From the IMG/VR virus record IMGVR_UViG_3300044974_001280, positions 1 through 64,000 of that record: 64,000 bases of DNA, one strand, 5' to 3'. A model generated the notes under the pieces. It made no database searches. It was not told where the DNA came from and worked only from the letters and a program-made list of their open reading frames with translations. Below are positions 7,705 through 55,241 of the stretch, piece after piece. Position numbers and translations under genes: made by a program. Numbering within the stretch: position 1 is the stretch's first letter; each line of letters starts with the position of its first letter.

Positions 7705-8526
7705 TTGGTTCAAAAAATCTTTTACAACAGTTCAATGCCCAGAGCAGGGTCTACTCTGATCCAAAATATACTGGGTCAGAATCCTCTTATTTACCCAACT
7801 CCAACCTCTGGTGTTTTCGAGATGCTCGCCGGGGCTAGAACAATTTTCACAGATGGTATAGAATTTAAAGCTCAATCGGAACAGGAAATGCTGGAGGGGT
7901 TTAAAGGATTCTTGAAAGGGGGACTTTATGGATTCTATAACAATATTACAGATAAACCTTACGTGATGGAAAAGTGTCGGGGCTGGAATTCGGAATGGGA
8001 GTTTGTGAATGCCTTCGATCCCAATCCAAAGATGATCTGTATGATTAGGGATATTAGGGCGGTCTATGCTTCTTTAGAAAAGAAATTCAGACAACATCCC
8101 CTTTTGGATCATCATCTAGCCAACTGGGGTAATTTGTCTGGAACTACCACCGATAAAAGGATCCAGGTTTGGTCGACTTCTCCGCCTATTGGTCCTTCCA
8201 TGGATAGAATCTACCAAGTTTTGGTCCAAGGGTTGCACGAAAAAATTCTGTTTGTTAAATTTGAAGATCTCTGTCGGGATCCAGAGTTTCAGATGAAAAG
8301 AATTTATGAATATCTCGATCTTGAATTTTTTCATCATGATTTTTACAACATTCCACAAATAACCAAAGAAGACGACCGGTGGTACGGTATTTTTGGAGAT
8401 CACGTCATTAGAAAGGAATTAAAGCCAGTGAGGGATGATTTCAGAGAAGTTTTAGGAACTAATGCCTGTAAATTAATTGAGGACAGCTATGCCTGGTTTT
8501 TTAACGATTTCGAATATCAAAGATGA
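7705..8526 (+). CDS. PAPS-dependent sulfotransferase
   Basis: 5'-PSB loop SMPRAGSTL, 3'-PB motif IRDIRAVYAS, and KFEDLCRDP. Confidence 0.9.
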   Translation: MVQKIFYNSSMPRAGSTLIQNILGQNPLIYPTPTSGVFEMLAGARTIFTDGIEFKAQSEQEMLEGFKGFLKGGLYGFYNNITDKPYVMEKCRGWNSEWEFVNAFDPNPKMICMIRDIRAVYASLEKKFRQHPLLDHHLANWGNLSGTTTDKRIQVWSTSPPIGPSMDRIYQVLVQGLHEKILFVKFEDLCRDPEFQMKRIYEYLDLEFFHHDFYNIPQITKEDDRWYGIFGDHVIRKELKPVRDDFREVLGTNACKLIEDSYAWFFNDFEYQR

Positions 8527-16408: not shown

Positions 16409-18202
16409 ATGAAAGAACAAGTAGTAGAAAGAGATTCAAATTATTGGAGTACTCAGAAAATTCAAGAACTACTCAGAAAAGGTGAGGAAGAAGGACTGGA
16501 TTATAAATCGGTTGACAACCCCTTTCACGAGGGTGAGACAGATCTTAAAAGAGCCAATCTGCTGTATGAATACACTCCAGAGGAAATAGTTGAAATTCAA
16601 AAGTGCGCCCAGGATTCTGTTTATTTTGCTAAATATTGTCAGGTCATGACTGACGACGGTCTCAGGAACATTGAATTGAGGGACTATCAGAAATCCATTT
16701 TAAGAGAGTATCAAAGACATCGTTTTTCAATTTTACTCGCACCACGTCAGATAGGTAAGAGCGTTACCAGTTCCATGATTTTAGTCTGGTATTTGCTCTT
16801 TAACCACGATAAAAACGCCATGATTTTGGCCAACGTGGGCTCGACTGCAGAAGAATTGATGGATAAAATTAAGGGCATAGTTAAAGGATTGCCTTGGTTT
16901 CTAAAACCGGGCATGGTTGTTAATAATGTCATGTCCATGAAATTCGACAATGGGTGCAGGGCTATAGCTAAAACAACCACTAAAACTTCTGCCATTGGAT
17001 TTACCATCCATTTTCTCTACATGGATGAGTTTGCCCACATTCACCCCAATTTCATTGAATCTTTCTTCAGATCGACCTACCCTACTGTTTCATCTTCTAA
17101 AGTCTCAAGAATTATTATTACTTCTACCCCTAATGGCATGAACAAATTCTATGATTTGTACCAAGGGGCTTTAACGGGGGAAAATTCCTTCAATCCTATA
17201 AGGGTTGATTGGTGGCAAGTACCCGGCAGGGATGAGGACTGGAAAAATCAAGAAATAGCCAATCTGGGCAGTGAAGAACTCTTCAACCAAGAATATGGCA
17301 ATCAATTTCTTAGCTCAACTACTCTTCTTCTCAGCTCGGCAGATTTAAGAAAAATGAAATCTAACGAGGCTGAATACACCTGGAGGGAAATAGATGCTTT
17401 GAGCGATCAGAAATTGAAATACCACAACTTCAGATGGCACCCTAAATTCCAGCTAGGAAGTGATTCTCTAGATGGAAAAAGCTTTGTTATTTCGGTCGAT
17501 TTGGCCTCGGGAAGCAGAGGTGACTACACTGTCGTCAACATCTTTAGGGTTGTACCTCTCCCCAAATCTTACATCGAAGAAATGTATGATTATAGCGATG
17601 AGGCTGATTTTTTCGGGCTTCTTCAGGTTGGCATCCTCAGAGACAATGAGATAGAGATAGAAGATTTTAAGAGAATGCTAGAGGCCTTAATTCTAAAGGT
17701 TTTCGACAGGGAAAGACTTACAGTTATCTTGGAAATGAATTTTAAAGGAGAATTGTTACTGGATAAACTCCTCCTTCACGATGACATTTCTCTGGATATA
17801 TTTTTACACACCAAACACACTGAATCTGCCAGAACTCCTAAGCCTGGTATTAAATACAATGAAAAAAACAAGCTCAAATACTGTGAAAGGTTGAGATACC
17901 TGGCCCGCAATAATAAAATCATCCTGAACGAAAAAAACTGGACCATCCCTGAAATGTTCTCTTTTGGTCTTAATACTACCGGTACTTATTCGAGCCAGTC
18001 AGGTCATGACGATGTGGCTATGTCGGTGGTAAATCTTTCGGGCCTGTTTGAAAGTACAGCTTTCCACGATTTAGTGGGTCAGATTTATGATGAGATAGAC
18101 GAAAATTACAAATCCCTAATCGACAAAAAACTCTCAGCCAAAATGGGGGAATTTGGAAGTAAGGAAAGCGATTTTTATTCTTCTTTCAGCAAGCTTCTTT
18201 AG
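16409..18202 (+). CDS. terL: Terminase large subunit (T4 gp17-like)
   Basis: LRDYQ, PRQIGKS (Walker A), YMDEFAH (Walker B), TSTPNG, QEY and HDDVAM nuclease motifs. Confidence 0.95.
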   Translation: MKEQVVERDSNYWSTQKIQELLRKGEEEGLDYKSVDNPFHEGETDLKRANLLYEYTPEEIVEIQKCAQDSVYFAKYCQVMTDDGLRNIELRDYQKSILREYQRHRFSILLAPRQIGKSVTSSMILVWYLLFNHDKNAMILANVGSTAEELMDKIKGIVKGLPWFLKPGMVVNNVMSMKFDNGCRAIAKTTTKTSAIGFTIHFLYMDEFAHIHPNFIESFFRSTYPTVSSSKVSRIIITSTPNGMNKFYDLYQGALTGENSFNPIRVDWWQVPGRDEDWKNQEIANLGSEELFNQEYGNQFLSSTTLLLSSADLRKMKSNEAEYTWREIDALSDQKLKYHNFRWHPKFQLGSDSLDGKSFVISVDLASGSRGDYTVVNIFRVVPLPKSYIEEMYDYSDEADFFGLLQVGILRDNEIEIEDFKRMLEALILKVFDRERLTVILEMNFKGELLLDKLLLHDDISLDIFLHTKHTESARTPKPGIKYNEKNKLKYCERLRYLARNNKIILNEKNWTIPEMFSFGLNTTGTYSSQSGHDDVAMSVVNLSGLFESTAFHDLVGQIYDEIDENYKSLIDKKLSAKMGEFGSKESDFYSSFSKLL

Positions 18203-18235
18203 AATAAATAATTACAAAATTCCTGTTTTTTTGTG

Positions 18236-18243
18236 GATATATA
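18236..18243 (+). promoter_or_regulatory. Putative late promoter GATATATA
   Basis: Recurrent motif. Confidence 0.7.
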
Positions 18244-18269
18244 AGCTGAAAAATATCCTCTGTAAAATA

Positions 18270-21200
18270 ATGGCAAAGAAAATAAAATTAGATCTCTCTC
18301 AATTCAAAGCTTCTGGTGTTTATACGCTGGAGTTTGATGCCTCCGAAAACGTCATTCTCACCTCCCAAACAATCAGGCTGGTGGTAGGATTTTCTAATAA
18401 AGGACCATTTAATGCTCCTGTTTACATTCCAGACATCACCACTGCTATAGCCATTTTTGGTGATATTGATAAGACTTTAGAAAGTCAAGGTTCTTATTTT
18501 CAAAGATCTATTTTTACTTGTCTGCAAACAGGTCCAGTTTTTGCCTTGAATCTATTAAAGCTAAACAATGATGAAGATAGTCCTACGGCAGATAAGGTAA
18601 ACTATTTTGGCTTTTCTGTTGCAACAGATGAACCTAATGGGGTTTTAACCTCTAGGCTCTATTCATCTTTCTACAATAAAGAAAGATTTTGGTACGCCGA
18701 TGTAGATTATTTCTTGGCAACAATGTCAATTCCTGATCAAGGTAGAATTTTTAATTTAGTGAATCTGGGTCAAGAGCCCATGAGCGTTATCGTCAGAAAA
18801 TCTACTGATGCTAACCCACCTTTACAAGGCTATGATGTTTTTGCCATCGATTGGTACGGAGCTGACAATGTTCCTAGCTACGTTCATCCTTATGACTACA
18901 TTTCAGATTGGTTCATAGATATTATTGCGGTGTCTGGTAACTGGACTGATTATGCATCTTTGTCACAAGACCCCGAATGGGCAGAATATTTTACTAGAAA
19001 TGGATTTGTTAAAAGTAAAATCAACCAATTCTTAAGCCAACAAAACGTTAATATCATTTCACAAACTACGGGCTGTTTGATCGTTGACTTTGTAGATCTG
19101 AATGGTAATAACCAATTCATCCAGACCCTAGTCAATAATAACACTCCTTCAACGGGTCTATTTTGTGCGGTTGACGCAGAAGCTTTGGATTATTTGTGTC
19201 AAAATAGGTTTAAAGTCGATTTAGTCGGTAATTTTTTAATTGATGAACTAACTGGTGACAGAGATCTTGAAGATCCAACTCTGAACTTTTTGAGCTACGA
19301 CCAGCAGCTCGTTCAAGATTACGTTTATACCCAAAATTACATAGGAATTACTGGTGCTGGTGGGGTAACAGGGGGAACAGCCGCTATTGCCTATTCGGGA
19401 TTGAACGTTGGTACTTTGCACAGAATAGATGGCGTAACAGGATCTTATGGTATTCCTGCCTCAGCTCTAGTTCCTTACAGTTCCACAGCTACTTTCGGGG
19501 GTCTACATTACGTTAGAACCAATTCGGGCGTGACGGGGGGTGCAGTTGTGAATGTTTATATTACCAACGGAGGTACCGGTTACACTAGTGCACCAACAGT
19601 CACTTTCTCTGGACCTGGAACTGGTGCTGCTGCCACTGCGGTCATAACTGGAGATGCGGTTTCTAGCATTACTTTAACAGCTAGCGGATCTGGATACACG
19701 TCCGCTCCTTCGGTCACTTTTTCGGGAGGCGGAGGCACGGGAGCGGCCGCTTCTGCAGATATCTTAACAGAACCTTCTTTGACCTCTGCTCAAAAAACTT
19801 TACTGAAAGATTTCTTGACCCCTTCTGCTACCAGTTCGCCTTTCATAGTAGGAACGGTCACTATTCCTGCGGGAGCATCGGGTAATGTCGTAAATCAGTT
19901 CTCTTCAGGGAATTTGGTTAAATTAAAAGTATCAGGTGTAGCTGAAACCTCTGGTGATTTAACTATCACCTTTACCCATCCATTGGACACCGGATTTTAT
20001 TCGGCTCAAGGAATTTCAGTTCAACCTACTTTCTTAACTGCCGGTATTACTGGAAGTTTTGTTAATGCCTTCTATCAGCAATTTGGAGCATCAGATTATT
20101 TAAATATAGATGCAATTGCTTCCGTCACAGGGGCAGCTCAAAGTAATACCCTCGTCGGACAAATTTCAACTAGTTTGTATCAAAATATTCAATACGATGA
20201 AATCCAAGACGGAGATACGGTTTGGTTGAACTCGGAGGGATCTTCTATTTACTACCTCGACACACAGTTAACTGTAGATAGAGATCAATACAACGTGGCT
20301 TACGTCAGGGCATTCGATAATATTGCCAGACAAAACCCTGACGATTTGGTGAATTATCCTCCCTTCGGTTCTGTTTATGCATCAGACAACATTGGAATTG
20401 GTGTTACTGCAGGTAAGACCGATATAGTTTCATCTGTTGCTTCCATAAATCAGTTTTTGGATGTAGTTCCTGGAGCTACAGGGTCCAGATCTAATCCCAA
20501 CACTTTTCTTTTTGCCCCAGATCAGGCGAACGATAAAATTATTTCAGTTGGAGATTTGCTGGTTTCTACTGATTTGGAACTCTGTGAAACTGTGGGGGCC
20601 AACCGACAGTCCAGACTAACCAAGGTCACTTCAGTGGCTCAGACGACAACTTCAGGGATAGTAAGAGTCACATGTTCCAGACCAATCTATTTCTATGCTG
20701 GAGACCCCGTCCAAGTACAAAAATTCAAATCGATCCCTCAATTTACTAGATCCTTCGATTTCATTTATTTACAGGGTTACACTATGAGAGATGCTCAGAG
20801 ACCTAACGGTTCTGATCTAAGGGTCAACGAAATTTTAGATGTCTTATACAACACGAACTTGGCTGCGACTCTTGCCACTAAAGACGTCATTTCATTCCGT
20901 TACATTGTCGATACCTTCAGCGGAACTATTCAGCCTAATTCTAAATTCCAGCTTTCAAAATTGGCAATGATGAGACAAAAAGCTTTGGCCTTCATCAATG
21001 CTCCTTCTATGGCTCAATTCAGAGCCAGTACGGATCCCAGATTTACTAATGCACCAACAGCAACAGATCCATTCCCTCCTTTGGAAGCCAGATATATCGC
21101 AGAGGGTGGAAATCTATCTTTAAATCCCTCCTACACCTTTAGCTTACCAACCCAAGATTTAGGAGCATCGTATGCTGCTTTCTACACTCCTTACATCACG

Positions 21201-21815
21201 GTCAGAGAGAACAACAGAAATCTAAACGTTCCTCCAGCTGCTTACGTTTCGAACAACTTTGTCCGGAAGTTTGCCAACGGAGAACCTTACAACATTATAG
21301 CTGGTCAGAAAAGAGGTACGATCTCAGGAGGTACTATCGTAGGAGTAGAATACGACTTCACCAACGACGATAGGGGCTGGCTAGAACCTTTCGGTCTCAA
21401 TCCAATCATCAAGAAGAGAGGATTCGGGGTCGTTATTTTCGGAAACCAAACCGCTTATCAGGTTGTAAATTCTGCATTTAATCTTGTGCACGTTCGGGAT
21501 TTACTGATCAGTCTTGAAAACGACGTCGAAGAAATTCTCTCTAATTATCTCTTTGACTTCAACGAGGACTCAATTCGTTTAGAGATCAAGACTATCGTTG
21601 ATACCTATTTGGATGGAGTGAGAGCAGGGGGTGGTATTTATGCCTACCAAGTTATTATGGATGCTTCCAATAATCCTCCTTCTATTATCGATCAGAACAT
21701 CGGTATCATCGATGTGATAATCGAGCCAGCAAGGGGTATTCAAAAATTCATTAACAGAATCACAGTCACCCGAACCGGAGGCATAGCTGCAGGAGGTTTC
21801 ATCAACTTTGTGTAA
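18270..21815 (+). CDS. gp18: Contractile tail sheath protein (gp18-like) with large insertion domains
   Basis: ASGVYTLEFD and GFSNKGPFNAP at the N-terminus; VPPAAYV, GNQT, VHVRDLL and FDFN at the C-terminus. ATG 18270 is preferred over 18153 because it follows the promoter. Confidence 0.92.
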   Translation: MAKKIKLDLSQFKASGVYTLEFDASENVILTSQTIRLVVGFSNKGPFNAPVYIPDITTAIAIFGDIDKTLESQGSYFQRSIFTCLQTGPVFALNLLKLNNDEDSPTADKVNYFGFSVATDEPNGVLTSRLYSSFYNKERFWYADVDYFLATMSIPDQGRIFNLVNLGQEPMSVIVRKSTDANPPLQGYDVFAIDWYGADNVPSYVHPYDYISDWFIDIIAVSGNWTDYASLSQDPEWAEYFTRNGFVKSKINQFLSQQNVNIISQTTGCLIVDFVDLNGNNQFIQTLVNNNTPSTGLFCAVDAEALDYLCQNRFKVDLVGNFLIDELTGDRDLEDPTLNFLSYDQQLVQDYVYTQNYIGITGAGGVTGGTAAIAYSGLNVGTLHRIDGVTGSYGIPASALVPYSSTATFGGLHYVRTNSGVTGGAVVNVYITNGGTGYTSAPTVTFSGPGTGAAATAVITGDAVSSITLTASGSGYTSAPSVTFSGGGGTGAAASADILTEPSLTSAQKTLLKDFLTPSATSSPFIVGTVTIPAGASGNVVNQFSSGNLVKLKVSGVAETSGDLTITFTHPLDTGFYSAQGISVQPTFLTAGITGSFVNAFYQQFGASDYLNIDAIASVTGAAQSNTLVGQISTSLYQNIQYDEIQDGDTVWLNSEGSSIYYLDTQLTVDRDQYNVAYVRAFDNIARQNPDDLVNYPPFGSVYASDNIGIGVTAGKTDIVSSVASINQFLDVVPGATGSRSNPNTFLFAPDQANDKIISVGDLLVSTDLELCETVGANRQSRLTKVTSVAQTTTSGIVRVTCSRPIYFYAGDPVQVQKFKSIPQFTRSFDFIYLQGYTMRDAQRPNGSDLRVNEILDVLYNTNLAATLATKDVISFRYIVDTFSGTIQPNSKFQLSKLAMMRQKALAFINAPSMAQFRASTDPRFTNAPTATDPFPPLEARYIAEGGNLSLNPSYTFSLPTQDLGASYAAFYTPYITVRENNRNLNVPPAAYVSNNFVRKFANGEPYNIIAGQKRGTISGGTIVGVEYDFTNDDRGWLEPFGLNPIIKKRGFGVVIFGNQTAYQVVNSAFNLVHVRDLLISLENDVEEILSNYLFDFNEDSIRLEIKTIVDTYLDGVRAGGGIYAYQVIMDASNNPPSIIDQNIGIIDVIIEPARGIQKFINRITVTRTGGIAAGGFINFV

Positions 21816-21835: not shown

Positions 21836-22390
21836 ATGGCAGGTTTACCTCATTTTCAGAATTCTCTGTACTCTATTAACAAATACGAGCCAGTTTATCT
21901 CAACCAATTCGAAGTGGTTGTAATTCCTCCAGCAGCTGTGGCAGGGGGTCAGCTTCTTCTTGAACAAGTTATGAGCGTAACCGGAATGGACGTGGATAAA
22001 AACCCGTCCTTTGTTTTCCAGAAGTACAAGTTTGCCAAAAGAAACTATGCCGGTGGTAAGCCAGATAGTACCGTCTTCGATTTAGGCTTAAGATTCAATG
22101 TCAATTTGAACGATGACAATTCAATGTACACTTTCAAGACTTTAAGACAGTGGACCGATTTGATCTATAATCCTTTGACGGGAGCCATGGGCATTAAATT
22201 AGATTACACAGGCACTATCATCATTTCGATTTTTAATAAAAATGGTGATGTTTTCAGAAGGATTACCTGCCGAGATTGTTTTCCGCTCAAGGCAATCGAC
22301 CCCATGGAACTTGATTACACTAATGGCACAACCTTGTATGAAATCAACATGAATTGGGCAGTTGATTATTGGGAAGATCTTTTCCTCTAA
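21836..22390 (+). CDS. Tail tube protein (gp19-like), paralog 1
   Basis: Follows the sheath; EPVYLNQFEV, LRQW.DLIYNP.TG and DYW motifs. Confidence 0.8.
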   Translation: MAGLPHFQNSLYSINKYEPVYLNQFEVVVIPPAAVAGGQLLLEQVMSVTGMDVDKNPSFVFQKYKFAKRNYAGGKPDSTVFDLGLRFNVNLNDDNSMYTFKTLRQWTDLIYNPLTGAMGIKLDYTGTIIISIFNKNGDVFRRITCRDCFPLKAIDPMELDYTNGTTLYEINMNWAVDYWEDLFL

Positions 22391-22405: not shown

Positions 22406-22987
22406 ATGTCCGGTTTACCACATTTCAATAATTCACTAGCAGCCAGGAACAATTTCGAGCCAGTTTTCTTAAACCAGTTCGAAGTTATCATTACCCCACC
22501 TGCTGCCGTGACTTTAGCAAATGTCAGATTTAACGGGGAGTCTATCATGACACAGCAGGTAAAAAGTATTGGTGGGAGTTTAGCAGTAGACATCCAGCCA
22601 GCCGCGCCGGTGACTCAATACTACAAATTCGCCGAAAGAAGATATGCCGGCGGTGAACCGTCAACTTCGGACGTAGAGTTTACCGTTAATTTCGAGGTGA
22701 ATTTAGATGAGAACAACTCGATGACTATTTACAAAATCCTGCGCCAATGGTCCGATTTGATCTACAATCCTTTGACAGGTGCGATGGGCCTAAAAAGAGA
22801 TTACGTTGGTCAAATGATTGTTTCTATTTTTAACAAACAAGGGGATGTATTCCGACGTCTAACTTTTAATAACTGTTTTTTGGTCAATCCTCTAACTACT
22901 ATGGCCCTTAGCTACGAGACTGGTGACGGCCTTTACGAGCTTGAAACAACCTGGAAGTCTGACTATTGGCAAGATCAGTTTTTATAA
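22406..22987 (+). CDS. Tail tube protein (gp19-like), paralog 2
   Basis: Clearly paralogous to the preceding gene. Confidence 0.8.
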   Translation: MSGLPHFNNSLAARNNFEPVFLNQFEVIITPPAAVTLANVRFNGESIMTQQVKSIGGSLAVDIQPAAPVTQYYKFAERRYAGGEPSTSDVEFTVNFEVNLDENNSMTIYKILRQWSDLIYNPLTGAMGLKRDYVGQMIVSIFNKQGDVFRRLTFNNCFLVNPLTTMALSYETGDGLYELETTWKSDYWQDQFL

Positions 22988-31626: not shown

Positions 31627-34335
31627 ATGGATTTACTCACACAACTCAAAACCCTCAAAGAAAATTCTCAGAATCCTGAGGTTGTTCTTTTTTGCGAAAA
31701 TAGCATCAGGGAGATACAGCAAGGTAACAGCAACCTAAATGAAACAATGCTGTTTGATCAGGTTCAATCTTTGCAAAACACACAGCAGTCAACGGAGAAA
31801 AATCCTTTGGAAATCATTAGAGAGCAAGAAATGTCAACCTCTAAGAATGCTGCCACTAGAATTCTTGAATCATGGGGTGGTATAGGTTCTAAAACTTTCA
31901 AAAGTGCTGGTAGCTATGTCGATGGTGTTGAGGAGAAAAAACAGGTCTCACATCAGAACATCAATGAGGGCATTTCTTCTTTTGCATCTCAAGACGCAGG
32001 AGTAGCTTCTCTGATGAAATCTCAAGAAGTTCACAATCTTGGAATTTTAGAATCCATTTTGAGCCTTAAGGATGCAGGAATCTTCGAGCATCCTTCTGTT
32101 AAGATCCTGGCAGAAAGATACTATCATTTGTTGAAAGGGAAAAATCTGCCTGAATTTATTATAGCAGAATCTTTTCTTGGAGAACTAGGTAACTTCAACT
32201 GGGATCAGGACGTTAAACGGATGTACGAAGGTATTTCGAATAAAATTTCTAATTTGAGACCTGAAATCGAAGTGGCCAAAGCTTTGTACGCAATCAGTCA
32301 AAATGGAACACCTGATTTTTACTCTCCAGTAACAGAATCTCTGAACAAATGGCTGGTGTCTGAAAACAAATCGATTTCTCTACTTTCTCAAGAGATTTCT
32401 AGATGGCAGTTCAATCCTATTGTTAAAAATCTCCTAAACAATCTTTCTCTGATGGAAAGTACAAGCCGTCAGCTTCATGTTCCTGTTAGTTCTGGTAACA
32501 GTGAAGTGAGTAAAGTTTATTCTCCTGTTTTTGTAGAAGGTGGAAAAACCCTATTTGTTCTGGGCAAAAATGTTTTCGAAGCAACTTCAAATGGAATTTC
32601 AAAGCTCAGACACGGTCAAATAGCTTCTCTGCCAAACCGGTATCTGTCCTTGTTAGAGTCCTATGCTAATTTGAACACCAAGGCTGATGAAAAAGGTCTT
32701 TCGATTTACTTAGGCAAAACCAGAATTCTTTTGGTGGAAGAGAGCGAAAAAACTTCGGTTTACTTCGGTGGTAAGAAATTGAACTTCTCTGACTATAATC
32801 AATTTGCTCGAATTCTGTCGATTGAGATGAGCAAAACTTTGGGTCTCAACGAGAACAAGATCATCAGAGACGTTATCAATATCTATGAGAATTTCAGTAG
32901 CATCGTGGAATTGGATTTCGCCAAAACTATTTCTTCTAAATTGTATGAAGGTGCCGCAGTACATTTGATGAAATGGGACGGTAAGATCTATTTGAACAAG
33001 ATCAACGAGTCAATGAGAGAAGATTCTTTCTATGTTGTGAATGGCAATCAGGCTACATCAATGGTGAAAGAATTCTTGAAATATGATATTTCTGAAGGTC
33101 TCACTCAATTTTTAGATGGTGAGAATAGAGTTAAATCTGTTATGATGAACGATAGAAAAGTTCTGATGGAGAATATAGCTCTAGTTGAAACTCAGATCCA
33201 GAAGATTGAGAACCAGATGTCAAAAAGTCCTTTGTTTGCAAATTCTCAAGAAATGCAAAATGCCAAATACCTCTTAGAAAGAGAGCTTGGAATTCTGAGA
33301 CAGAAATGGTCGGTTGTGAATGAAGAAATTAAGAAAATTGAATCTGCTCCAGATCCAATTCATAACATGAACGAGGACGATGATTTCAATGTGGGGGAAT
33401 ACGTAAAGGTGAAAGAATCAGGCAACACGGGTAAAATCATTTCTATCAACGGTTCATCTGGTTCCTATACTGTCTTAATGGACAACGGCAGAACTGGAGA
33501 ATTTAGATTGGATGAAATCATCAATCTAGACGATGCGCTGGCTGCCGCTGGTGACGAGAACGAAGCCGAAGCAGAAACCCAAGAAGAATTGAAAGAAGGA
33601 ACTCAGCCTTTAGCATCGGCTCCAGGTTCGTCAAAAACGGGTAAATTAGACAAATCTGTTGCTGCCACTATGAGAAAAAGTACCACAAAAGCTCCTGCAG
33701 GTTCTCATCAAAACGAAGCTGGAAAAAAGGACATTGAAGATCTGGATGACGCCAATCTAGAAGAAGCACCAGCAGGTCAAAAACTAACAAAATATAAGGC
33801 TTACAAAAAAGCTGGATATAACCTGGCTGAATCTAAAGGCACAGGTAAATCCACTTCAGCCCCAGAAACCAGTTGGGAATCAGCAAAGGCAAAGGAAATG
33901 AATCTGGCAGTTGCCCCAGGTAAAACAAACTATGACTCCAGTTATTTCTACAAGACAAAAGTCACTCAAGGGGAATCTAAGAATCCCGAAGTGATGAAAA
34001 CGGACCCCAATTTTGCTGCTGCTCCAGGTACTCAAGGAGCTGGTAAAGATCTGAAGTACAGAGTCAGCTCGGAGATGGGTTACAACGTAGATGAAATGGC
34101 GGAGATCGAAAAGACCAATCAAGAGTTGGCAAAAGCCCCTGGTCCTATTGGAACATACGGCAAAAAATTCGGCGCCAGAACCATCCACGGAAAACCAGGT
34201 AAACCCGAGGTCATGAACATCGATCCTAATTTTGCTAATGCCCCAGGAATGAACTCAAAAGGTGAAGTTGATTACGATCTAAATGACGAAATGGGTTACA
34301 ATCTGGACGAAAGCCAGGAGTCAAAAAAAAACTGA
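31627..34335 (+). CDS. Large probable prohead core/internal protein with a KOW/SH3-like domain and C-terminal APG...GYN repeats
   Basis: Many (L/I)NE-type protease sites; FNVGEYVKV...GKII; repeated APG and GYN(L/V) motifs. Confidence 0.6.
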   Translation: MDLLTQLKTLKENSQNPEVVLFCENSIREIQQGNSNLNETMLFDQVQSLQNTQQSTEKNPLEIIREQEMSTSKNAATRILESWGGIGSKTFKSAGSYVDGVEEKKQVSHQNINEGISSFASQDAGVASLMKSQEVHNLGILESILSLKDAGIFEHPSVKILAERYYHLLKGKNLPEFIIAESFLGELGNFNWDQDVKRMYEGISNKISNLRPEIEVAKALYAISQNGTPDFYSPVTESLNKWLVSENKSISLLSQEISRWQFNPIVKNLLNNLSLMESTSRQLHVPVSSGNSEVSKVYSPVFVEGGKTLFVLGKNVFEATSNGISKLRHGQIASLPNRYLSLLESYANLNTKADEKGLSIYLGKTRILLVEESEKTSVYFGGKKLNFSDYNQFARILSIEMSKTLGLNENKIIRDVINIYENFSSIVELDFAKTISSKLYEGAAVHLMKWDGKIYLNKINESMREDSFYVVNGNQATSMVKEFLKYDISEGLTQFLDGENRVKSVMMNDRKVLMENIALVETQIQKIENQMSKSPLFANSQEMQNAKYLLERELGILRQKWSVVNEEIKKIESAPDPIHNMNEDDDFNVGEYVKVKESGNTGKIISINGSSGSYTVLMDNGRTGEFRLDEIINLDDALAAAGDENEAEAETQEELKEGTQPLASAPGSSKTGKLDKSVAATMRKSTTKAPAGSHQNEAGKKDIEDLDDANLEEAPAGQKLTKYKAYKKAGYNLAESKGTGKSTSAPETSWESAKAKEMNLAVAPGKTNYDSSYFYKTKVTQGESKNPEVMKTDPNFAAAPGTQGAGKDLKYRVSSEMGYNVDEMAEIEKTNQELAKAPGPIGTYGKKFGARTIHGKPGKPEVMNIDPNFANAPGMNSKGEVDYDLNDEMGYNLDESQESKKN

Positions 34336-35405: not shown

Positions 35406-35440
35406 AAAATACCGACTGGAAAAAGCAATATCATCCAACG

Positions 35441-35448
35441 GATATATA
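35441..35448 (+). promoter_or_regulatory. Putative late promoter GATATATA
   Basis: Recurrent motif. Confidence 0.7.
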
Positions 35449-35506
35449 CTTGCTGTAAATCGAAATAAAATTCACGTCGGTGGTAAAAAGGAGGAATAGT
35501 TTCTAA

Positions 35507-37111
35507 ATGGCAGGTTTTAGCGAGAATCCAAACACCAATCCAATCTTTCAGAAGATTAGGGATTCGGTTAAAAATCTGAGTAATTTCGGGATCCGATATG
35601 GTGACATGGTTGTCAAAAATTCTCAGGCTATTGGGGCCACTGAAGCTGAATTTTTGAAAAAAGGACCTATTGAGGATGAAACCACCTTCTTTTCTTTAGG
35701 TCGCCAAGACACAACCACCAGGCAGTATATTTCTTATTTTGATAAAGACTATGCGGGAAAAAGAGATTATCTGAGAAAATTCTCTTTGAACCCTGAGATA
35801 GAATACATTTTAGACACTGTCTGTGATGAATCTATTACTTACGATTCTTATAATTTCTTTGCCTATCCAGCTTTTCTGAACCTATCTAATCTTAAAAAGT
35901 CCGTTATCGATCGCATCGATTCGACTTATAAGAAACTGTATGACATGTTCGGTTTCAACGATGACATTTCGGCCTGGCAGTATTTCAGGCAAATGCTGGT
36001 GGATGGATTTATTGCCTTTGAGATTGTCTTTGATGATAGCGGCAGAAACATCATCGGATTTAAAGAGCTAGATGCCACGACCCTCATGCCTTCTGTGGAA
36101 AAACAGAAAGACGGAACTTTTTTGAATGTTTGGTATCAATACCCTAAAGATGAAAGAAAAAGAAGAATGTTGTACGACTCTCAGGTCATCTACATTTCTT
36201 ACGCCAAAGGCAATTCTATTTCTAGAGTTAGCTACACAGAAAGACTGATTAGACCTTACAATGTCTTGAGAATTATCGAATACACCAGAGTTATTTGGTC
36301 GGTCATGAATGCTTCTTTTAGGATGAAGATGACCATTCCGGTGGGATCTAGATCCCAACAGAAAGCAATGCAAACTCTGGGAGAATTGATGTCTATCTAC
36401 AAAGAGGACATCCAGTTTAACGACGAGAGTGGAGAACTTTCTGTTAACGGCCAACCCAAGATTCAGTTCTATAAGAACTATCTAATGCCCAAAGGAGCAG
36501 GAGGCACCCCTTCTATTGAGCCTCTAAACACGGCAGGCCCCAATCTGAATGATCCTGCCCCATTAGCCTATTTTTTCGATAAATTAGTGCAGGAATCAAA
36601 AATTCCTTTTTCCCGGTTTCAGGGGCCTGATGGCGGATCTATTGGAAAATACGCTAATGCTGCCGAAGGTTTAGATAAAGAAGAAATCAGATTCTCTAAA
36701 TTTATTATGAGGCTTAGATCTGTATTTCAGGATATCCTGGTTAAGCCTCTATGGATTCAAATCTGTAAAGATTTTCCCCAACTAGAAAAGGATTACACTT
36801 TTAAATCCCAATTAGGTCTAAGCTATGTTTCAGATAACCCCTTCCGGGTTAACCAGGAGATTGAAACCATTACGAAGAGAAAAGAATTTATAGATTCTCT
36901 TTATACCCTCACCGACGAGGAAGGAAATCCTTTCTTTTCTATCTCATATCTAGTGGAAAACTACATGGGTCTTACTGAGGATGATATAGCTTCTAATAAA
37001 AAAGCCAGAAGTGATAACAAATTAAAATCTGCTGAAGAAGCTGCGGCTGCCAGCGCATCTCCGCCAGCGGGCGAGTCCGAGCCAGAAGTAGCACCAGAAA
37101 CCCCAGTATAA
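35507..37111 (+). CDS. Portal protein (gp20-like), paralog 1
   Basis: EIEYILDTVCDE, WQYFRQMLVDG, SY.ERLIRPYN.LR, KIPFSRF and EEIRF.KFI.RLR motifs. Confidence 0.85.
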   Translation: MAGFSENPNTNPIFQKIRDSVKNLSNFGIRYGDMVVKNSQAIGATEAEFLKKGPIEDETTFFSLGRQDTTTRQYISYFDKDYAGKRDYLRKFSLNPEIEYILDTVCDESITYDSYNFFAYPAFLNLSNLKKSVIDRIDSTYKKLYDMFGFNDDISAWQYFRQMLVDGFIAFEIVFDDSGRNIIGFKELDATTLMPSVEKQKDGTFLNVWYQYPKDERKRRMLYDSQVIYISYAKGNSISRVSYTERLIRPYNVLRIIEYTRVIWSVMNASFRMKMTIPVGSRSQQKAMQTLGELMSIYKEDIQFNDESGELSVNGQPKIQFYKNYLMPKGAGGTPSIEPLNTAGPNLNDPAPLAYFFDKLVQESKIPFSRFQGPDGGSIGKYANAAEGLDKEEIRFSKFIMRLRSVFQDILVKPLWIQICKDFPQLEKDYTFKSQLGLSYVSDNPFRVNQEIETITKRKEFIDSLYTLTDEEGNPFFSISYLVENYMGLTEDDIASNKKARSDNKLKSAEEAAAASASPPAGESEPEVAPETPV

Positions 37112-37116
37112 TAGAC

Positions 37117-38742
37117 ATGGCAGGATTTTTAGATAATGCTCAGGAAAAATCTTTTTTGGGGGTTCTGTACAGAAACCTCGGAAAGATTAGTAAATTCGGG
37201 ATGCAATATGAAGATATGGTTATCCGTAATTCTCAGGCCATTGGTGCTACCGAATCGACCTTTTTTAACAATCAAGGCACTGGTTTTACCGAAAATGATG
37301 CCTTTTTCTGGACTTTAGGTTACCAGGATACCAGAATCAGAAAATACATCGCCTATTTTGATAAGGATTATCTTGGTAAAAGAGAATTCCTTCGCAAATT
37401 TGCTCTCAACGGAGAAATAGATTTCATTCTAGACACCGTTACTGATGATGCGATAAACTACGATGACAAGAATTTTTTCTGCTACCCCAGTTTGGTGAAT
37501 ATTGAGCTGAAAGACAACGTCAGGGAGAGAGTGGAAGAAAATTTTAGAACCTTATATAATCTTTTTGGCTTTCAACAAAGCATTCTGGCTTGGCAGTACT
37601 TCAAGCAGTTTTTGGTTGATGGTTTTTTGGCTTTTGAGATTGTTTATTCTACAGATGGCAAGAAAATAGTTGGATTCAAAGAACTAGACGCCACCTCACT
37701 TCAGCCGGCCACTGAAAAACAGCCCAACGGGGAATTCCAACAAATTTGGATCCAATATCCTCAGGACAACCGAATGACCAGAAAGCTGAAATCGGAACAG
37801 GTTATTTACTTGTCTTACGCCAAGGGCAATGCTGTCTCCAGAGTTAGCTACACAGAAAGGCTCATTCGTTCCTATAACATTTTAAGGGTGATGGAAAATA
37901 CGAGAGTTATTTGGAATGTCATGAATGCATCCTATCGACTGAAGTTCATTATCCCTGTTGGTACTCAATCCATGCAAAAAGGCATGCAGACTCTTGGTCA
38001 ATTGATGTCCCAGTACAAGGAGGAGATCCAGATCAACGACACTTCGGGGGAACTAACGGTCAATGGTGCACCCAGAGTCCAGTTTTATAAAAACTATCTG
38101 TTCCCTGAGAAGGACGGCGAATCTCCTGATATTAGCACACTCAACCCCAGCGGACCGGATTTTAACGTGATGGAAAATGTTGTTTATTTTTACAACAAAT
38201 TGAAGTTGGATTCTAAAATCCCTTACGCCAGGTTTTCAGCCAGATCCGGAACCCCTGCTAATTATCAGATTAGCATAGATCAGTTGGAGAGGGACGAAAT
38301 TCGATATGAAAAATTTGTAACTCGTCTGAGATCTGTTTTCCAGGAGATCCTAGTTAAACCTCTTTATATCCAAATGTGTCTAGATTTTCCTGTTTTGTCA
38401 AAGGATCGTACTTTTAAGGTAAATTTGGGTTTAGATTATGTGAAGGAAAATGTCTTCGAACAAATGATTCAGTTGTCCAACTATTCCAAGAGAGCATCTT
38501 TTATTTCCAGCATGGGTGAGATAAAAATGAAAGTGGGGGAAGAGGAATTACCCTATTTTGACAAAGAATGGCTTATCAAAAGATGGCTGGGTCTTAGTAT
38601 GGATGAATACAGGATGAACGAAAAGTACAAGAAGGAAGAGAAGGAAGAAGCAGATAAATTAAAGAAAGATCAAGAGAAAGAAGGAGAGAAGAAAGGAGAA
38701 GGGGGAGAGGGACAAGCAGAAACACCTAGTTTTACCCTATAA
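37117..38742 (+). CDS. Portal protein (gp20-like), paralog 2
   Basis: Same motif set, collinear with paralog 1. Confidence 0.85.
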   Translation: MAGFLDNAQEKSFLGVLYRNLGKISKFGMQYEDMVIRNSQAIGATESTFFNNQGTGFTENDAFFWTLGYQDTRIRKYIAYFDKDYLGKREFLRKFALNGEIDFILDTVTDDAINYDDKNFFCYPSLVNIELKDNVRERVEENFRTLYNLFGFQQSILAWQYFKQFLVDGFLAFEIVYSTDGKKIVGFKELDATSLQPATEKQPNGEFQQIWIQYPQDNRMTRKLKSEQVIYLSYAKGNAVSRVSYTERLIRSYNILRVMENTRVIWNVMNASYRLKFIIPVGTQSMQKGMQTLGQLMSQYKEEIQINDTSGELTVNGAPRVQFYKNYLFPEKDGESPDISTLNPSGPDFNVMENVVYFYNKLKLDSKIPYARFSARSGTPANYQISIDQLERDEIRYEKFVTRLRSVFQEILVKPLYIQMCLDFPVLSKDRTFKVNLGLDYVKENVFEQMIQLSNYSKRASFISSMGEIKMKVGEEELPYFDKEWLIKRWLGLSMDEYRMNEKYKKEEKEEADKLKKDQEKEGEKKGEGGEGQAETPSFTL

Positions 38743-38752: not shown

Positions 38753-39751
38753 ATGAATTTACTAAAATTATTTTCCACCCAAAGGATCTTGGTGGTTGGA
38801 GATTCGATTCTAGATCACTATGTCTATGGTAAAGTTCACCGGGTTTCCCCTGAGGCACCAGTCCCGGTTGTTCTCAAGAACAGAGAAGAGTATTTTCTAG
38901 GAGGAGCGGCAAACGTGGCTCAGAACATCACCGCCTTCGGAGCTAAGTGTACCCTGTTGTCCTTGATAGGGCCCGACGTCGAAAGCAAAATTCTTTTGCA
39001 AAAATGCCTGGATGAAAACATCGAGCCTCTTTTTATTGAAGAAAGAGGAAGACCGACAACCAAAAAAACAAGAGTTTTAGGCAATAGACATCAGATTGTT
39101 AGAATCGATGTGGAAGAATCCAGAGATTTATCTTTGGGCTCCAGTTTAAAAATCATGAAAATTTTCGAAGAACAAATTCAATCCCACGATGGGGTCATTT
39201 TCCAAGATTACGGTAAAGGACTATTTACAAATTCCCTTCTGAATCAGCTTGTTCAGATTTGTCAAAAACACGACAAAAAGATTCTGGTGGATCCTAAAGA
39301 GCCAGATCTTTTTCGCTACCAAGGTGCCTGTTTTATCAAGCCCAATCTGGCAGAGTTCAAAGCCATGTTAAAACTAAAGACCGAGGATGAATTAGAAATC
39401 CATCAAATCTCTGATTATGCCCAACGAGCCCTGGAAGAATTTGATTATAATTTCTTTTTGATCACTCTGTCTGAACGGGGTATTTTATTAGTGGGCAGAG
39501 ACTTTTCCCGACATCTCCCAGGTATCAATGTGGATGTCTCGGATGTGTCAGGAGCAGGAGACACAGTTTCTGCTGTTTTTGGTTTGGGTTTTTTCTCTAG
39601 CCTTAAAAATCCAAAGCCTGGACTGGAGCTACACCACATAGCCGAACTGTCCAATTTGGCTGGATCTCTGGTGTGCAGACACTCTGGAGCGGTTCCTGTT
39701 GATCCTGAAGAATTACAAAAATTATTTGAAAAAAGTTCGTTTTTTTCCTGA
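38753..39751 (+). CDS. rfaE: D-glycero-D-manno-heptose-7-phosphate kinase (RfaE/HldE domain I, PfkB fold)
   Basis: VGD.ILDHY.YG...RVSPEAPVPV, GGAANVA, DYGKG, VDPK, KPN and DVSGAGDT motifs. Confidence 0.9.
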   Translation: MNLLKLFSTQRILVVGDSILDHYVYGKVHRVSPEAPVPVVLKNREEYFLGGAANVAQNITAFGAKCTLLSLIGPDVESKILLQKCLDENIEPLFIEERGRPTTKKTRVLGNRHQIVRIDVEESRDLSLGSSLKIMKIFEEQIQSHDGVIFQDYGKGLFTNSLLNQLVQICQKHDKKILVDPKEPDLFRYQGACFIKPNLAEFKAMLKLKTEDELEIHQISDYAQRALEEFDYNFFLITLSERGILLVGRDFSRHLPGINVDVSDVSGAGDTVSAVFGLGFFSSLKNPKPGLELHHIAELSNLAGSLVCRHSGAVPVDPEELQKLFEKSSFFS

Positions 39752-53519: not shown

Positions 53520-55241
53520 ATGAAACTAATTAACGAAGCCGAGATTTTTGATACCTGGGCACCTATTATTGAACAAAAAGCTGGTATCACTGATCCCTCA
53601 AAACAAACTTGGTTGGCAAAATATTGCCACTACCACTCCCTCAACGAGTCTGCCGGTGCATATCAGTCGTTGAATGTCGTCAACGGTATGGGTGCCGTTA
53701 CACCTCCTACCTTCCCAGCAGCAACAGCAGCCGGTTCTCTTGGCGGTCTAACTCCTAACCAAGGATTCTACAGCCAGTCTTGGCAAGGATCTGGCGATAA
53801 GTTCCCTTCACTTCTTCCTTTGGCTATTCAGGTAGCTGCGAAGACTGTAGGTTTCGACATCGTTCCAGTTATTCCAATGTCCGGTCCTTCTGGCGTTTTG
53901 TCCTACCTTGACTATGTGTATGCCGGTGGTAAGATCAGCCCGCAAAACGCCGGAACTACAGCTGCCGAGGCTTTGGCAAATGCTCCTACAATGATCAAAT
54001 TGCAAATCACTACCCAGACGAACATGTCTTTACTAGAGGTAGGACCAAATACACCAGGTACAGATTATTACATCTCCAACGCCAGTGCTTCAGCTACTGA
54101 ATACATCACTGCTAGGTTTGTAGGCTACTCTAGAATTGATGGATTTCCAATTTTTGAAATCACAGCAATGACCGCAGGTGAAACTGTTGCCTCCGTTCTT
54201 AGCGGAGGTGCTTTCATTGGTACTACAATTGCCGGAGATGAAGTTGGTAGTACCACAGCTACTGCTTCTCTGGTTAAGGCTCTAGAGGATCACATTCAGG
54301 GTTTCTCTGGTGCAGGTTTTTATGACGATCAGAATTGGCAAGGTCCCTTCACCGATGGCACACAGACTTACAATCCGATGCTAAGAAGTGTAGGTGAAGA
54401 AAACTACTACAATTTGATGGGTCTAACGACTTTCACTAAGTTCGTAGAAGCCGACACCTTCCAGGTAGCCGCTTCCGTTACCACGGAGCAAATCCAGGAT
54501 CTCAACAAGCAATTCGGAATCGATGTTATCTCAATGATCGAAAACGCATTGGTGAATGAGGTTTCTCAGGCTATCAACAAGCACATCTTGTCAAGGGCAT
54601 TTGCTTTAGGATGGTCTAACACCTATGCTTTCTTCCAAACAGAAGCACAGAATTTGAACTTGAGCCTAGTATTGGGTGGTGCAACAGGAACTACCCTTGC
54701 CTATGTTACTAAAACTGACGGAACCCAATCAATGTCTATCCCAGCCGGGCCTGCTAATGGAGGTTACGAGAATTTGTCAACTCTACAGAGAAGGCTTTTC
54801 TCCCGGATCTTGGCAGCTGCCAACATGGTAGCTAACAGAGGTAGAAGAGGTCCTGCTAACTTCATTGTTACCAACGCTAATTTGGCTTCGGCAATGCAGG
54901 ACATCAGCCAATTCACTTTCGCTCCTTTCACTAACACCTTGACTCAGAACAATGGTACTCTGTATCCAGTAGGTTCTTTGGCAGGTATGACTGTCTACGT
55001 CGATCAAAACATGAGATTCTCCGATAACCGTATCCTAGTCGGTAGAAAAGGTGGAGACGACGAGCCAGGTCTAAAATTCATGCCTTACATGATGGCTGAA
55101 TCTATCCAGACTATCTCCGAGGGAACTATGTCTCCTAAAATCGCGGTCAAGTCTCGTTACGCTCTAGTAGAAGCTGGTTTCCACCCAGAAACCATGTATG
55201 CTACTTTCTTCGTACAAGTTCCGGTTGGAGGTATCAACTAA
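53520..55241 (+). CDS. gp23: Major capsid protein (gp23-like)
   Basis: PMSGPSG, EQIQDL, EV...INK, ANRGRRGPANF, PY and KSRY motifs. Confidence 0.92.
   Translation: MKLINEAEIFDTWAPIIEQKAGITDPSKQTWLAKYCHYHSLNESAGAYQSLNVVNGMGAVTPPTFPAATAAGSLGGLTPNQGFYSQSWQGSGDKFPSLLPLAIQVAAKTVGFDIVPVIPMSGPSGVLSYLDYVYAGGKISPQNAGTTAAEALANAPTMIKLQITTQTNMSLLEVGPNTPGTDYYISNASASATEYITARFVGYSRIDGFPIFEITAMTAGETVASVLSGGAFIGTTIAGDEVGSTTATASLVKALEDHIQGFSGAGFYDDQNWQGPFTDGTQTYNPMLRSVGEENYYNLMGLTTFTKFVEADTFQVAASVTTEQIQDLNKQFGIDVISMIENALVNEVSQAINKHILSRAFALGWSNTYAFFQTEAQNLNLSLVLGGATGTTLAYVTKTDGTQSMSIPAGPANGGYENLSTLQRRLFSRILAAANMVANRGRRGPANFIVTNANLASAMQDISQFTFAPFTNTLTQNNGTLYPVGSLAGMTVYVDQNMRFSDNRILVGRKGGDDEPGLKFMPYMMAESIQTISEGTMSPKIAVKSRYALVEAGFHPETMYATFFVQVPVGGIN

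What the first reader, a model, noticed from the sequence alone, without database searches (positions are those of the whole stretch)
35507..38742. Two full-length tandem portal paralogs
Seen: two intact, collinear gp20-like genes (534 and 541 aa) share blocks such as YFDKDY.GKR..LRKF.LN.EI and SRVSYTERLIR.YN.LR, but have different acidic tails. Known: portals are normally homo-dodecamers from one gene. Inference: an alternating hetero-dodecamer (6+6, matching tail symmetry) or two specialised vertices.
Basis: partly seen in the sequence, partly recalled or inferred. Interest (0 to 1): 0.65.

Follow-up and report, generated by a model that had tools for sequence, protein, structure and literature searches.

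The report
Conserved tandem portal gene pair
A whole group of large lake-water phages has kept two diverged copies of the portal gene side by side since one ancient duplication, which suggests, but does not prove, that their DNA-entry ring is built from two kinds of subunit instead of the usual one.

Summary
Window 35507-37111 (534 aa) and 37117-38742 (541 aa) are two intact, same-strand, full-length T4-type portal genes (PF07230, E 1e-62 and 1e-60), 52% identical and 5 nt apart. They lie in a 230-kb uncultured lake-water phage.

The pair is not an accident of this genome. Every related IMG/VR contig with room carries both genes in the same order (59 unique complete pairs). A tree shows one duplication at the base of the group, and independent duplications are rejected (p-AU 0.0015). 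The nearest outgroups have one portal. Both copies are under equally strong purifying selection (dN/dS about 0.02-0.04).

The copies share the N-terminal segment, wing, stem and clip tip. They differ consistently in channel-lining loops and the crown. Exactly one copy per genome keeps an ancestral C-terminal aromatic anchor, and which copy keeps it differs between the two subclades.

My best reading, at 0.45 confidence and by inference only, is a mixed portal ring, possibly 6+6. Separate homomeric rings are not excluded. The tail-tube gene was duplicated with the same phyletic pattern. I found no deposited phage or paper describing this. I rate it a new variant of a known kind.

The parts
35488..35494 (+). 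Shine-Dalgarno-like AAGGAGG, 12 nt before the start of portal A, inside the 101-nt intergenic region 35406-35506. This is the only non-coding gap of the pair that could hold a promoter.
   Evidence: Read directly. Relatives carry a TCTATAAA-like motif about 20-25 nt upstream of the first copy.
35507..37111 (+). Portal paralog A (first copy), 534 aa, T4 gp20-type.
   Evidence: AF2 model pLDDT 62.9; best Foldseek hits are T4 gp20 chains (9mkb, 6uzc, 3ja7), E 5e-18.
36488..36511 (+). A residues 328-335, aligned to the T4 inner clip loop (R338/K342 region). Net charge is 0 to +1 in all A orthologs.
   Evidence: HMMER alignment to T4 gp20; charge census over 36 orthologs.
36596..36670 (+). A residues 364-388, aligned to the T4 tunnel loop. 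Net charge is 0 to +1 in all A orthologs.
36998..37108 (+). A C-terminal tail (residues 498-534): Lys/Glu-rich start, then an Ala/Pro/Glu-rich low-complexity end with no terminal hydrophobic motif.
37112..37116 (+). 5-nt spacer (TAGAC) between the stop of A and the start of B. It holds no Shine-Dalgarno-like sequence, promoter-like or terminator-like site. The spacer is 2-23 nt in all relatives.
37117..38742 (+). Portal paralog B (second copy), 541 aa, T4 gp20-type.
   Evidence: AF2 model pLDDT 59.0; best Foldseek hits are T4 gp20 chains, E 4e-15.
38104..38127 (+). B residues 330-337, inner-clip-loop equivalent. Net charge is -2 to -1 in all B orthologs.
38212..38283 (+). B residues 366-389, tunnel-loop equivalent. 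Net charge is +2 to +3 in all B orthologs.
38620..38739 (+). B C-terminal tail (residues 502-541): Lys/Glu-rich helix, Gly-rich linker and the terminal anchor SFTL (38728-38739).
   Evidence: Single-copy outgroup portals also end in a linker plus an aromatic terminus.
21836..22390 (+). Tail-tube paralog 1 (184 aa). It is not part of the portal locus, but it was duplicated with the same phyletic pattern.
22406..22987 (+). Tail-tube paralog 2 (193 aa), 52% identical to paralog 1.

Best explanation
Both genes encode working portal subunits of one virion. SHOWN: a single tandem duplication of a T4-type portal gene at the base of this lake-water phage group; both copies retained in every sampled genome in fixed order; both under strong and equal purifying selection; a few absolutely conserved differences between them. 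INFERRED: the two genes are transcribed late as one bicistronic message, and their products co-assemble into one mixed dodecamer at the single portal vertex, most simply alternating 6+6. In that ring both subunit types present the same outer surfaces. These are the N-terminal capsid-anchoring segment, the wing, the stem and the clip tip that binds terminase and neck. The ring's inside is two-fold differentiated. Neutral tunnel loops would alternate with +2/+3 ones, and neutral inner clip loops with acidic ones. The crowns would differ, and only half the subunits would carry the C-terminal aromatic anchor. That anchor hangs on a flexible acidic linker inside the head and most likely tethers a core, scaffold or internal partner. 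The duplication thus lets the channel and crown specialise, for example one subunit type tuned for DNA grip or gating and the other for an internal partner, without changing how the ring fits the capsid, motor and neck.
For: Retention and age:
- All 142 IMG/VR loci with room have both genes, first copy then second, 2-23 nt apart, giving 59 unique complete pairs. All 'single' cases are contig-end cuts.
- In the tree the first-copy clade has support 98 and the second-copy clade 88; together they score 99 and show mirror topologies.
- The AU test rejects separate duplications per subclade (delta lnL 42.4, p 0.0015).
- Outgroups LR756500/1/2/4, PAU and PTm1, plus six LR756500-like IMG/VR loci, have one portal.

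Selection:
- NG86 omega is 0.018-0.029 for A and 0.014-0.038 for B in every dS bin.
- Third-position identity between A and B is no higher within a genome than across genomes, so there is no gene conversion.
- The post-duplication stems are symmetric, 0.40 vs 0.33.

Same outer surfaces:
- 143 columns are conserved and identical in both clades, against only 11 fixed differences, nearly all conservative.
- Invariant residues in the first 46 aa and the clip-tip motif P-x-G-x-x-S-x-Q-K occur in both copies. [quoted passage not shown]
- So the interfaces look cross-compatible, and mixing is the default expectation for co-expressed paralogs of a homomer (established knowledge).

Different inside:
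- The paralog-specific signal is concentrated at A residues 301-420 and 461-500.
- Loop charges do not overlap between the paralogs, in both subclades.

Requirement at the level of the pair:
- The ancestral-type C-terminal anchor is kept on exactly one copy. It is on the second copy in 46/46 main-subclade pairs and on the first in 12/13 deep-subclade pairs, although the cores group by gene position.

Co-expression:
- There is no promoter-, terminator- or SD-like site between the genes, and a late-promoter-like motif occurs only upstream of the first.
Against: Nothing here shows physical co-assembly, stoichiometry or order. There are no RNA, proteome or virion data (one search found no RNA run). 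Every solved portal I know of, and every one returned by the fold searches, is built from one gene product. The fixed differences are few and conservative, so I see nothing that would enforce strict alternation; a statistical mixture or separate rings are equally allowed. The mapping of loops to T4 rests on an alignment of about 20% identity and on AF2 models of only moderate confidence, which are low in the clip and stem. One lineage (L078) has the anchor on neither copy.
Confidence: 0.45

Rival explanations
1. The two proteins form two separate homo-dodecamers. Each nucleates its own proheads, so the phage makes two virion populations that differ in channel and crown properties (for example headful sensing, DNA retention or ejection gating). 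Alternatively, the two rings are used at different stages or places.
For: Both copies keep all portal domains, the capsid-anchoring N-terminus and the clip tip, so each could in principle be a complete portal. The differences are perfectly conserved and paralog-specific. All known portals are homomers (and established knowledge).
Against: The genes are co-transcribed and adjacent, and their shared surfaces are almost identical, so avoiding mixed rings would need an interface incompatibility that I do not see. The C-terminal anchor was lost from different paralogs in the two subclades. That is hard to reconcile with fixed, separate roles for each ortholog. No tailed phage is known to have two portal vertices or two portal types (own knowledge; literature searches found nothing).
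Confidence: 0.27
2. Only one copy is the virion portal. The other has a non-virion role, for example an assembly chaperone or nucleator, a regulator of terminase, or a decoy for host immune sensors that recognise portal proteins (Avs-type sensors; own knowledge).
For: Duplication followed by a new function is common. The tail-tube gene, a known trigger of another defence sensor (DSR2; own knowledge), is duplicated in the same lineages.
Against: Both copies evolve at the same slow rate with symmetric post-duplication branches. Both keep full length and the capsid-, neighbour- and terminase-contacting motifs, which is more constraint than a decoy or chaperone should need. Which copy carries the anchor differs between subclades.
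Confidence: 0.12
3. The pair is a redundant or dosage duplicate, or one copy is decaying.
For: One contig has an in-frame TAG in the first copy and one has a frameshift in the second.
Against: The duplication predates a split at which orthologs are only about 55% identical. Synonymous sites between the copies are saturated. Omega is about 0.02-0.04 in both. Eleven fixed differences are kept in 36 vs 36 sequences. The two broken cases are single contigs out of more than 100 and may be errors.
Confidence: 0.03
4. The tandem arrangement is an assembly artefact, with two strain variants joined.
For: None beyond the metagenomic origin of the record.
Against: 52% identity is far beyond strain variation. 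Contigs from four independent runs bridge the junction, and more than 100 IMG/VR contigs from many samples show the same arrangement.
Confidence: 0.01

Closest known systems
Bacteriophage T4 portal protein gp20 (Pfam PF07230; PDB 3JA7, 6UZC, 9MKB)
   Same: Both copies match the family model end to end. They fold like gp20. They keep a conserved N-terminal segment and a clip-tip Q-K aligned to T4 R295-K296. They lie in a T4-like gene order: terminase, sheath, tube, then gp55-like, gp4-like, portal, then protease and major capsid protein.
   Different: T4 and every other deposited phage with this family have one gene: 1,181 places in 1,179 records, and the only extra place is a 101-aa fragment. 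Here there are two, about 16-19% identical to gp20 and 52% to each other. They have paralog-specific channel loops, crowns and C-terminal tails.
Portals of huge phages LR756500-LR756504 (Al-Shayeb-type 460-735 kb genomes), Prevotella Lak phages, Sphingomonas phage PAU and Tenacibaculum phage PTm1
   Same: These are the nearest sequence relatives (27-46% identity). The LR7565xx portals end in a Gly/Pro/Ala/Glu-rich linker plus an aromatic C-terminus, like one copy of each pair here.
   Different: All are single-copy. Their tail-tube gene is also single where tested.
T4 structural paralog pairs: gp23/gp24 (hexamer vs vertex capsid protein) and gp19/gp3 (tube vs tube terminator)
   Same: These are precedents for a duplicated virion protein whose copies take non-equivalent positions in one particle (PMC12929629 for gp19/gp3; gp23/gp24 from own knowledge).
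   Different: Those copies form separate homo-oligomers at different places. No such second place is known for a portal.
Rings of alternating paralogs: F1/V1-ATPase A3B3, thermosome alpha/beta, RuvBL1/RuvBL2 (own knowledge; RuvBL1/2 also in PMC5974087)
   Same: A homomeric ring was duplicated into two retained, co-expressed paralogs that share outer architecture and differ in functional sites. This is the mechanism I propose here.
   Different: There is no homology to portals. For those systems co-assembly is shown experimentally; here it is inferred.

Membership tests
T4-type portal protein (Pfam PF07230 Portal_T4 / PHROG 213) | Full-length match to the family profile above the curated cut-off | tested here: met
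   A: 211.1 bits, model 7-430/433. B: 204.5 bits, model 9-433/433. Cut-off 22.9. PHROG 213 E 5e-59 and 6e-59.
T4-type portal protein (Pfam PF07230 Portal_T4 / PHROG 213) | Portal fold (wing-stem-clip-stem-wing-crown) resembling solved gp20 | tested here: met
   Foldseek top hits for both models are T4 gp20 chains (E 5e-18 and 4e-15, probability 1.00), followed by other phage portals. Model confidence is only moderate (pLDDT 62.9 and 59.0; clip and stem low).
T4-type portal protein (Pfam PF07230 Portal_T4 / PHROG 213) | Clip-tip residues that bind the packaging ATPase (T4 N291, M292, R295, K296) | tested here: inconclusive
   The aligned motif P-x-G-x-x-S-x-Q-K is invariant in both paralogs, with K aligned to T4 K296 and Q to R295. 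The alignment is at about 20% identity and function was not assayed.
T4-type portal protein (Pfam PF07230 Portal_T4 / PHROG 213) | Encoded among T4-like head and tail morphogenesis genes of a tailed phage | tested here: met
   The same window holds terminase large subunit, sheath, tail tube, gp14-like neck protein, gp55-like late sigma, gp4-like head completion protein, prohead protease and major capsid protein.
T4-type portal protein (Pfam PF07230 Portal_T4 / PHROG 213) | Assembles as a dodecameric ring at one capsid vertex | not testable with these tools
   Needs purified protein or virions.
Canonical single-gene (homo-dodecameric) portal | One portal gene per genome | tested here: not met
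   Two full-length genes occur here and in all relatives of the group, against one in 1,179 deposited phage records with this family.
Hetero-oligomeric ring made of retained paralogs | Both paralogs retained long-term under purifying selection with fixed paralog-specific differences | tested here: met
Hetero-oligomeric ring made of retained paralogs | Co-expression of the paralogs | tested here: inconclusive
   The genes are 2-23 nt apart with no promoter- or terminator-like site between them, and a late-promoter-like motif occurs only upstream of the first. No RNA run holds the phage.
Hetero-oligomeric ring made of retained paralogs | Physical co-assembly in defined stoichiometry | not testable with these tools
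   Needs co-purification, native mass spectrometry or cryo-EM.

The most novel reading that the evidence does not exclude
These phages build an obligate, ordered A6B6 portal. That would be the first exception to the one-gene homo-dodecamer rule of tailed phages and herpesviruses. The DNA channel would have six-fold rather than twelve-fold chemistry: alternating tunnel-loop and clip-loop charges, and only six internal C-terminal anchors. It would have evolved together with a duplicated tail-tube protein, so the whole DNA conduit would be re-symmetrised.
Probability: 0.3. Interest if true: 0.85.

Novelty: new variant of a known kind. Interest (0 to 1): 0.66.

Why it matters
The portal is the most conserved machine part of tailed phages and herpesviruses. 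It nucleates the capsid, docks the packaging motor, senses a full head and gates DNA exit. In every studied case it is twelve copies of one protein.

A large, widespread environmental phage group has kept two diverged portal genes for a very long time. Its differences are concentrated on the DNA-facing loops and the crown, and the C-terminal anchor obeys a 'one per pair' rule. This is a natural experiment on which portal functions can be split between subunits.

If the ring is mixed, symmetry arguments about portal-DNA, portal-motor and portal-core interactions become directly testable, because two chemically distinguishable subunit classes are available. The test needs no cultured phage: the two genes can be synthesised and co-expressed.

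Tried and rejected
Tools that gave no usable answer:
- Complex prediction of A(1-497) with B(1-501) returned 'no answer' (score 0.02, mark 0.34, controls not run).
- The search for RNA runs found 20 lake-water DNA runs and no RNA run, so expression could not be checked.
- I hoped the T4 gp20 paper's supplement held an inter-subunit contact table for mapping the paralog-specific sites, but it has none. Model coordinates are not exposed, so I could not run an interface-enrichment test.
- Six literature searches for portal paralogs, two portal genes or hetero-dodecameric portals found nothing relevant (one search gave T4 background only). The library is incomplete, so this is weak evidence of novelty.

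Ideas tested and rejected:
- Independent duplications in the two subclades would have explained the swapped tails trivially. The AU test rejects this.
- Ongoing gene conversion as the cause of the identical central region is rejected, because third-position identity is the same within and across genomes.
- A shared C-terminal docking motif on other proteins of the genome was not found: no other ORF has an acidic linker plus an F-x-L end.

Not run, and constraints observed:
- The protein family is not in doubt, and the INPHARED and IMG/VR scans already covered relatives. As a result, a search for fused A-B portals was not done.
- No other genetic code was used.
Full report
1. The observation

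The window is the first 64 kb of a 230,445-bp IMG/VR virus record that CheckV estimates as 85% complete. Two ORFs lie on the + strand at 35507-37111 (534 aa, 'A') and 37117-38742 (541 aa, 'B'), separated by the five bases TAGAC. They are 52% identical and 71% similar over 503 residues.

Each ORF matches Pfam Portal_T4 (PF07230) over essentially the whole model, at 211 and 204 bits against a cut-off of 22.9. Each also matches PHROG 213, 'portal protein'. AlphaFold2 models built on 72-sequence alignments are of moderate confidence (pLDDT 62.9 and 59.0; good in the wing, poor in the clip and stem). Their best structural matches are T4 gp20 chains (E 5e-18 and 4e-15), followed by other phage portals.

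There are no further portal matches in the genome. An all-against-all comparison of its ORFs shows that this is the strongest long paralog pair it contains.

The neighbourhood is T4-like. Upstream lie a gp14-like neck protein, the terminase large subunit, the sheath and the tail tube. Next come a gp55-like late sigma factor and a gp4-like head-completion protein, directly before the portals. Downstream lie DNA ligase, clamp loader, prohead protease and major capsid protein.

The arrangement is not an assembly artefact. Twenty lake-water metagenome runs hold the stretch, and contigs from four runs not flagged as possible sources each bridge the A/B junction.

2. Distribution and history

Two IMG/VR scans returned 142 related loci. 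Every locus with enough sequence carries both genes, always on the same strand, always first-type then second-type, 2-23 nt apart. This gives 59 unique complete pairs.

All apparent singles are cut by a contig end. The only defects are one contig with an in-frame TAG in the first copy and one with a frameshift in the second.

I built a maximum-likelihood tree of 36 non-redundant pairs plus six single-copy outgroups. It places all first copies in one clade (support 98) and all second copies in another (88). The two together form a clade (99), with mirror-image internal topologies of 27 'main' and 9 'deep' lineages.

Forcing the deep-subclade copies together, which would mean independent duplications, costs 42.4 log-likelihood units and is rejected (p-AU 0.0015).

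The nearest relatives outside the group all have one portal:
- the huge phages LR756500-LR756504;
- six LR756500-like IMG/VR contigs;
- Sphingomonas phage PAU;
- Tenacibaculum phage PTm1.

LR756501 has in addition only a 101-residue fragment. Among 50,697 deposited phage records, 1,179 contain this portal family, in 1,181 places. So no deposited phage has two full copies. No cultured member of the group exists in that collection; the best match is 44% identical.

3. Selection

Pairwise Nei-Gojobori estimates over the 59 pairs give omega of 0.018-0.029 for A and 0.014-0.038 for B in every dS bin. The branches leading from the duplication to each clade are similar in length, 0.40 and 0.33.

Third-codon-position identity between A and B is no higher within a genome than between genomes (0.32-0.47 against 0.32-0.44). 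The copies therefore do not homogenise each other, and their shared protein sequence is maintained by selection.

It is absent.

4. What is shared and what differs

In a joint alignment, 143 columns are at least 90% conserved and identical in both clades. Only 11 columns are fixed differences, nearly all conservative. Examples are Q73/K76, Y88/F91, M327/F329, D358/N360, D390/E391, D409/E410 and A500/Y504. Most are kept in all 36 sequences of each clade, and none in fewer than 92%.

Both copies keep an invariant N-terminal segment (M1, G3, F4, F27, G28, Y31, D33, V35, N38-Q40, G43, E46). [quoted passage not shown]

Both copies also keep the clip-tip motif P-x-G-x-x-S-x-Q-K. It aligns with T4 N291-K296, the site where the packaging ATPase and later gp13 bind (PMC4493910, PMC12929629).

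I compared orthologous and paralogous identity across the two subclades. There is no paralog-specific signal at residues 201-300, which cover the end of the wing, stem helix 5 and the clip tip. The strongest signal is at 301-360, 361-420 and 461-500. By alignment to T4 these regions are the inner half of the clip with the inner clip and channel loops, the tunnel loop with the long helix 8, and the crown.

Loop charges do not overlap between the paralogs, in both subclades:

| Loop (T4 equivalent) | A net charge | B net charge |
|---|---|---|
| Inner clip loop | 0 to +1 | -2 to -1 |
| Tunnel loop | 0 to +1 | +2 to +3 |

These assignments rest on an alignment of about 20% identity and should be read as approximate.

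5. The C-terminal tails

The single-copy portals of the huge-phage (LR7565xx) outgroups end in a Gly/Pro/Ala/Glu-rich linker followed by an aromatic terminus (endings NFDF, EFEF, PTF, SGY). PAU and PTm1 do not.

In the main subclade the second copy ends in a short linker plus [S/E/D]-F-T-L, and the first copy has only a long Pro/Ala/Glu-rich tail. This holds in 46 of 46 unique pairs.

In the deep subclade the arrangement is reversed. The first copy ends in E-F-K-L or S-F-T-L, and the second has the Pro/Ala/Glu-rich tail, in 12 of 13 pairs. One early-branching lineage has the motif at neither terminus.

The cores, the crown and even the proximal tail (A-K versus Y-K at A500/B504) still group by gene position. 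So the anchor was lost, or exchanged, on different paralogs after the subclades split. The constraint therefore appears to be 'one anchored and one unanchored copy per genome'. That is a property of the pair, not of a particular ortholog.

6. Expression signals

A is preceded by a 101-nt intergenic region with AAGGAGG 12 nt before the start codon. In relatives, a TCTATAAA-like motif lies about 20-25 nt upstream of the first copy. It recalls the T4 late promoter TATAAATA (own knowledge), and a gp55-like late sigma factor is encoded two genes upstream.

Between A and B there is no room for a promoter, and no terminator-like or Shine-Dalgarno-like site. I infer a late bicistronic message. This was not verified, because no RNA run contains the phage.

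7. Interpretation

Shown:
- one ancient duplication;
- universal retention in fixed order;
- equal strong constraint on both copies;
- conserved outer surfaces;
- paralog-specific inner surfaces;
- a one-per-pair C-terminal anchor.

Inferred: co-expressed paralogs of a ring-forming homomer whose contact surfaces are nearly unchanged are expected to co-assemble. The pair-level rule for the anchor fits a single mixed ring better than two assemblies with fixed separate roles.

I therefore favour a mixed portal dodecamer, most simply alternating 6+6, at confidence 0.45. It would present uniform outer surfaces to capsid, motor and neck, and a two-class interior. Separate homomeric rings giving two virion types come next (0.27). 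A non-virion role for one copy follows (0.12). Redundancy and artefact are effectively excluded.

In T4 the 12-to-6 transition lies between gp13 and gp14 (PMC12929629).

8. A linked observation

The tail-tube gene is also a tandem pair (21836-22390 and 22406-22987; 52% identical; PHROG 45). It is tandem in 77 of 80 related loci, and the other three are cut by contig ends. It is tandem in long contigs of both subclades, but single in LR756500 and LR756501.

Portal and tube were thus both duplicated on the branch leading to this group. The second tube copy may simply be a terminator or initiator ring like T4 gp3. Even so, two duplications of ring components of the DNA conduit on the same branch deserve a joint test.

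9. Comparison, novelty and limits

Both proteins are members of the T4-type portal family. The defining features that could be tested are met. The dodecameric state could not be tested. What departs from every described case is the conserved two-gene state with divided features.

I found no paper on it in the held library and no deposited phage with it. I rate it a new variant of a known kind, with interest 0.66.

Limits:
- there are no experimental data of any kind;
- the complex prediction gave no verdict (see Tried and rejected);
- structural mapping is approximate;

Noticed in passing
window 21836-22390 and 22406-22987 (+): Tandem tail-tube paralogs (184 and 193 aa, 52% identical, PHROG 45) sit directly after the sheath gene 18153-21815. 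They are tandem in 77/80 related IMG/VR loci and in both subclades, but single in LR756500 and LR756501. This is the same phyletic pattern as the portal pair.
   Followed up: partly
window 38753-39751 (+); also 5586-6512, 10610-11674, 11671-12855: A heptose-7-phosphate kinase of RfaE domain I type lies directly downstream of portal B (TIGR02198 E 1.7e-90, 303 bits, just under the 345 cut-off). The window also holds a family-9 heptosyltransferase-like protein and two other glycosyltransferases. The phage may carry part of a heptose pathway.
   Followed up: partly
window 31627-34335 (+): A 902-aa ORF with no family match except a weak SH3-like hit. Its C-terminal third carries repeated short motifs (A-P-G and M-G-Y-N-[LV]-D-E), which might mark an internal head or scaffold-like protein with repeated sites.
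   Followed up: no
L053/L137 (locus position about 6600) and L012 (about 8170-8310): One related contig has a single-base change that creates an in-frame TAG at codon 201 of the first portal copy, where relatives have K, M or N. Another has a frameshift in the second copy. These may be sequencing errors or rare natural knock-outs of one paralog.
   Followed up: partly
upstream of the first portal copy in relatives (e.g. L098, L121, L034); window 35406-35506: A TCTATAAA / GATATATACAATAAA-like motif lies about 20-25 nt before the start codon in most relatives, resembling a T4-type late promoter. Most relatives lack a Shine-Dalgarno sequence, while the window's phage has AAGGAGG.
   Followed up: no
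LR756501.1 15166-15351 (locus L149): The 735-kb huge phage has, besides its full portal, a 101-aa open frame that matches only the last ~60 positions of the portal model (E 1.8e-5).
   Followed up: no
G000:C1:133330-133806 (locus L158 9330-9806): A 158-aa ORF is 43% identical over 82 residues to the major capsid protein (window 53520-55241). It is a partial capsid-protein paralog far from the head module.
   Followed up: no
G000:C1:147039-149936 and 158793-159611 (- strand): A family of four related ORFs on the minority strand, up to 71% identical, three of them adjacent, with only unknown-function PHROG matches.
   Followed up: no
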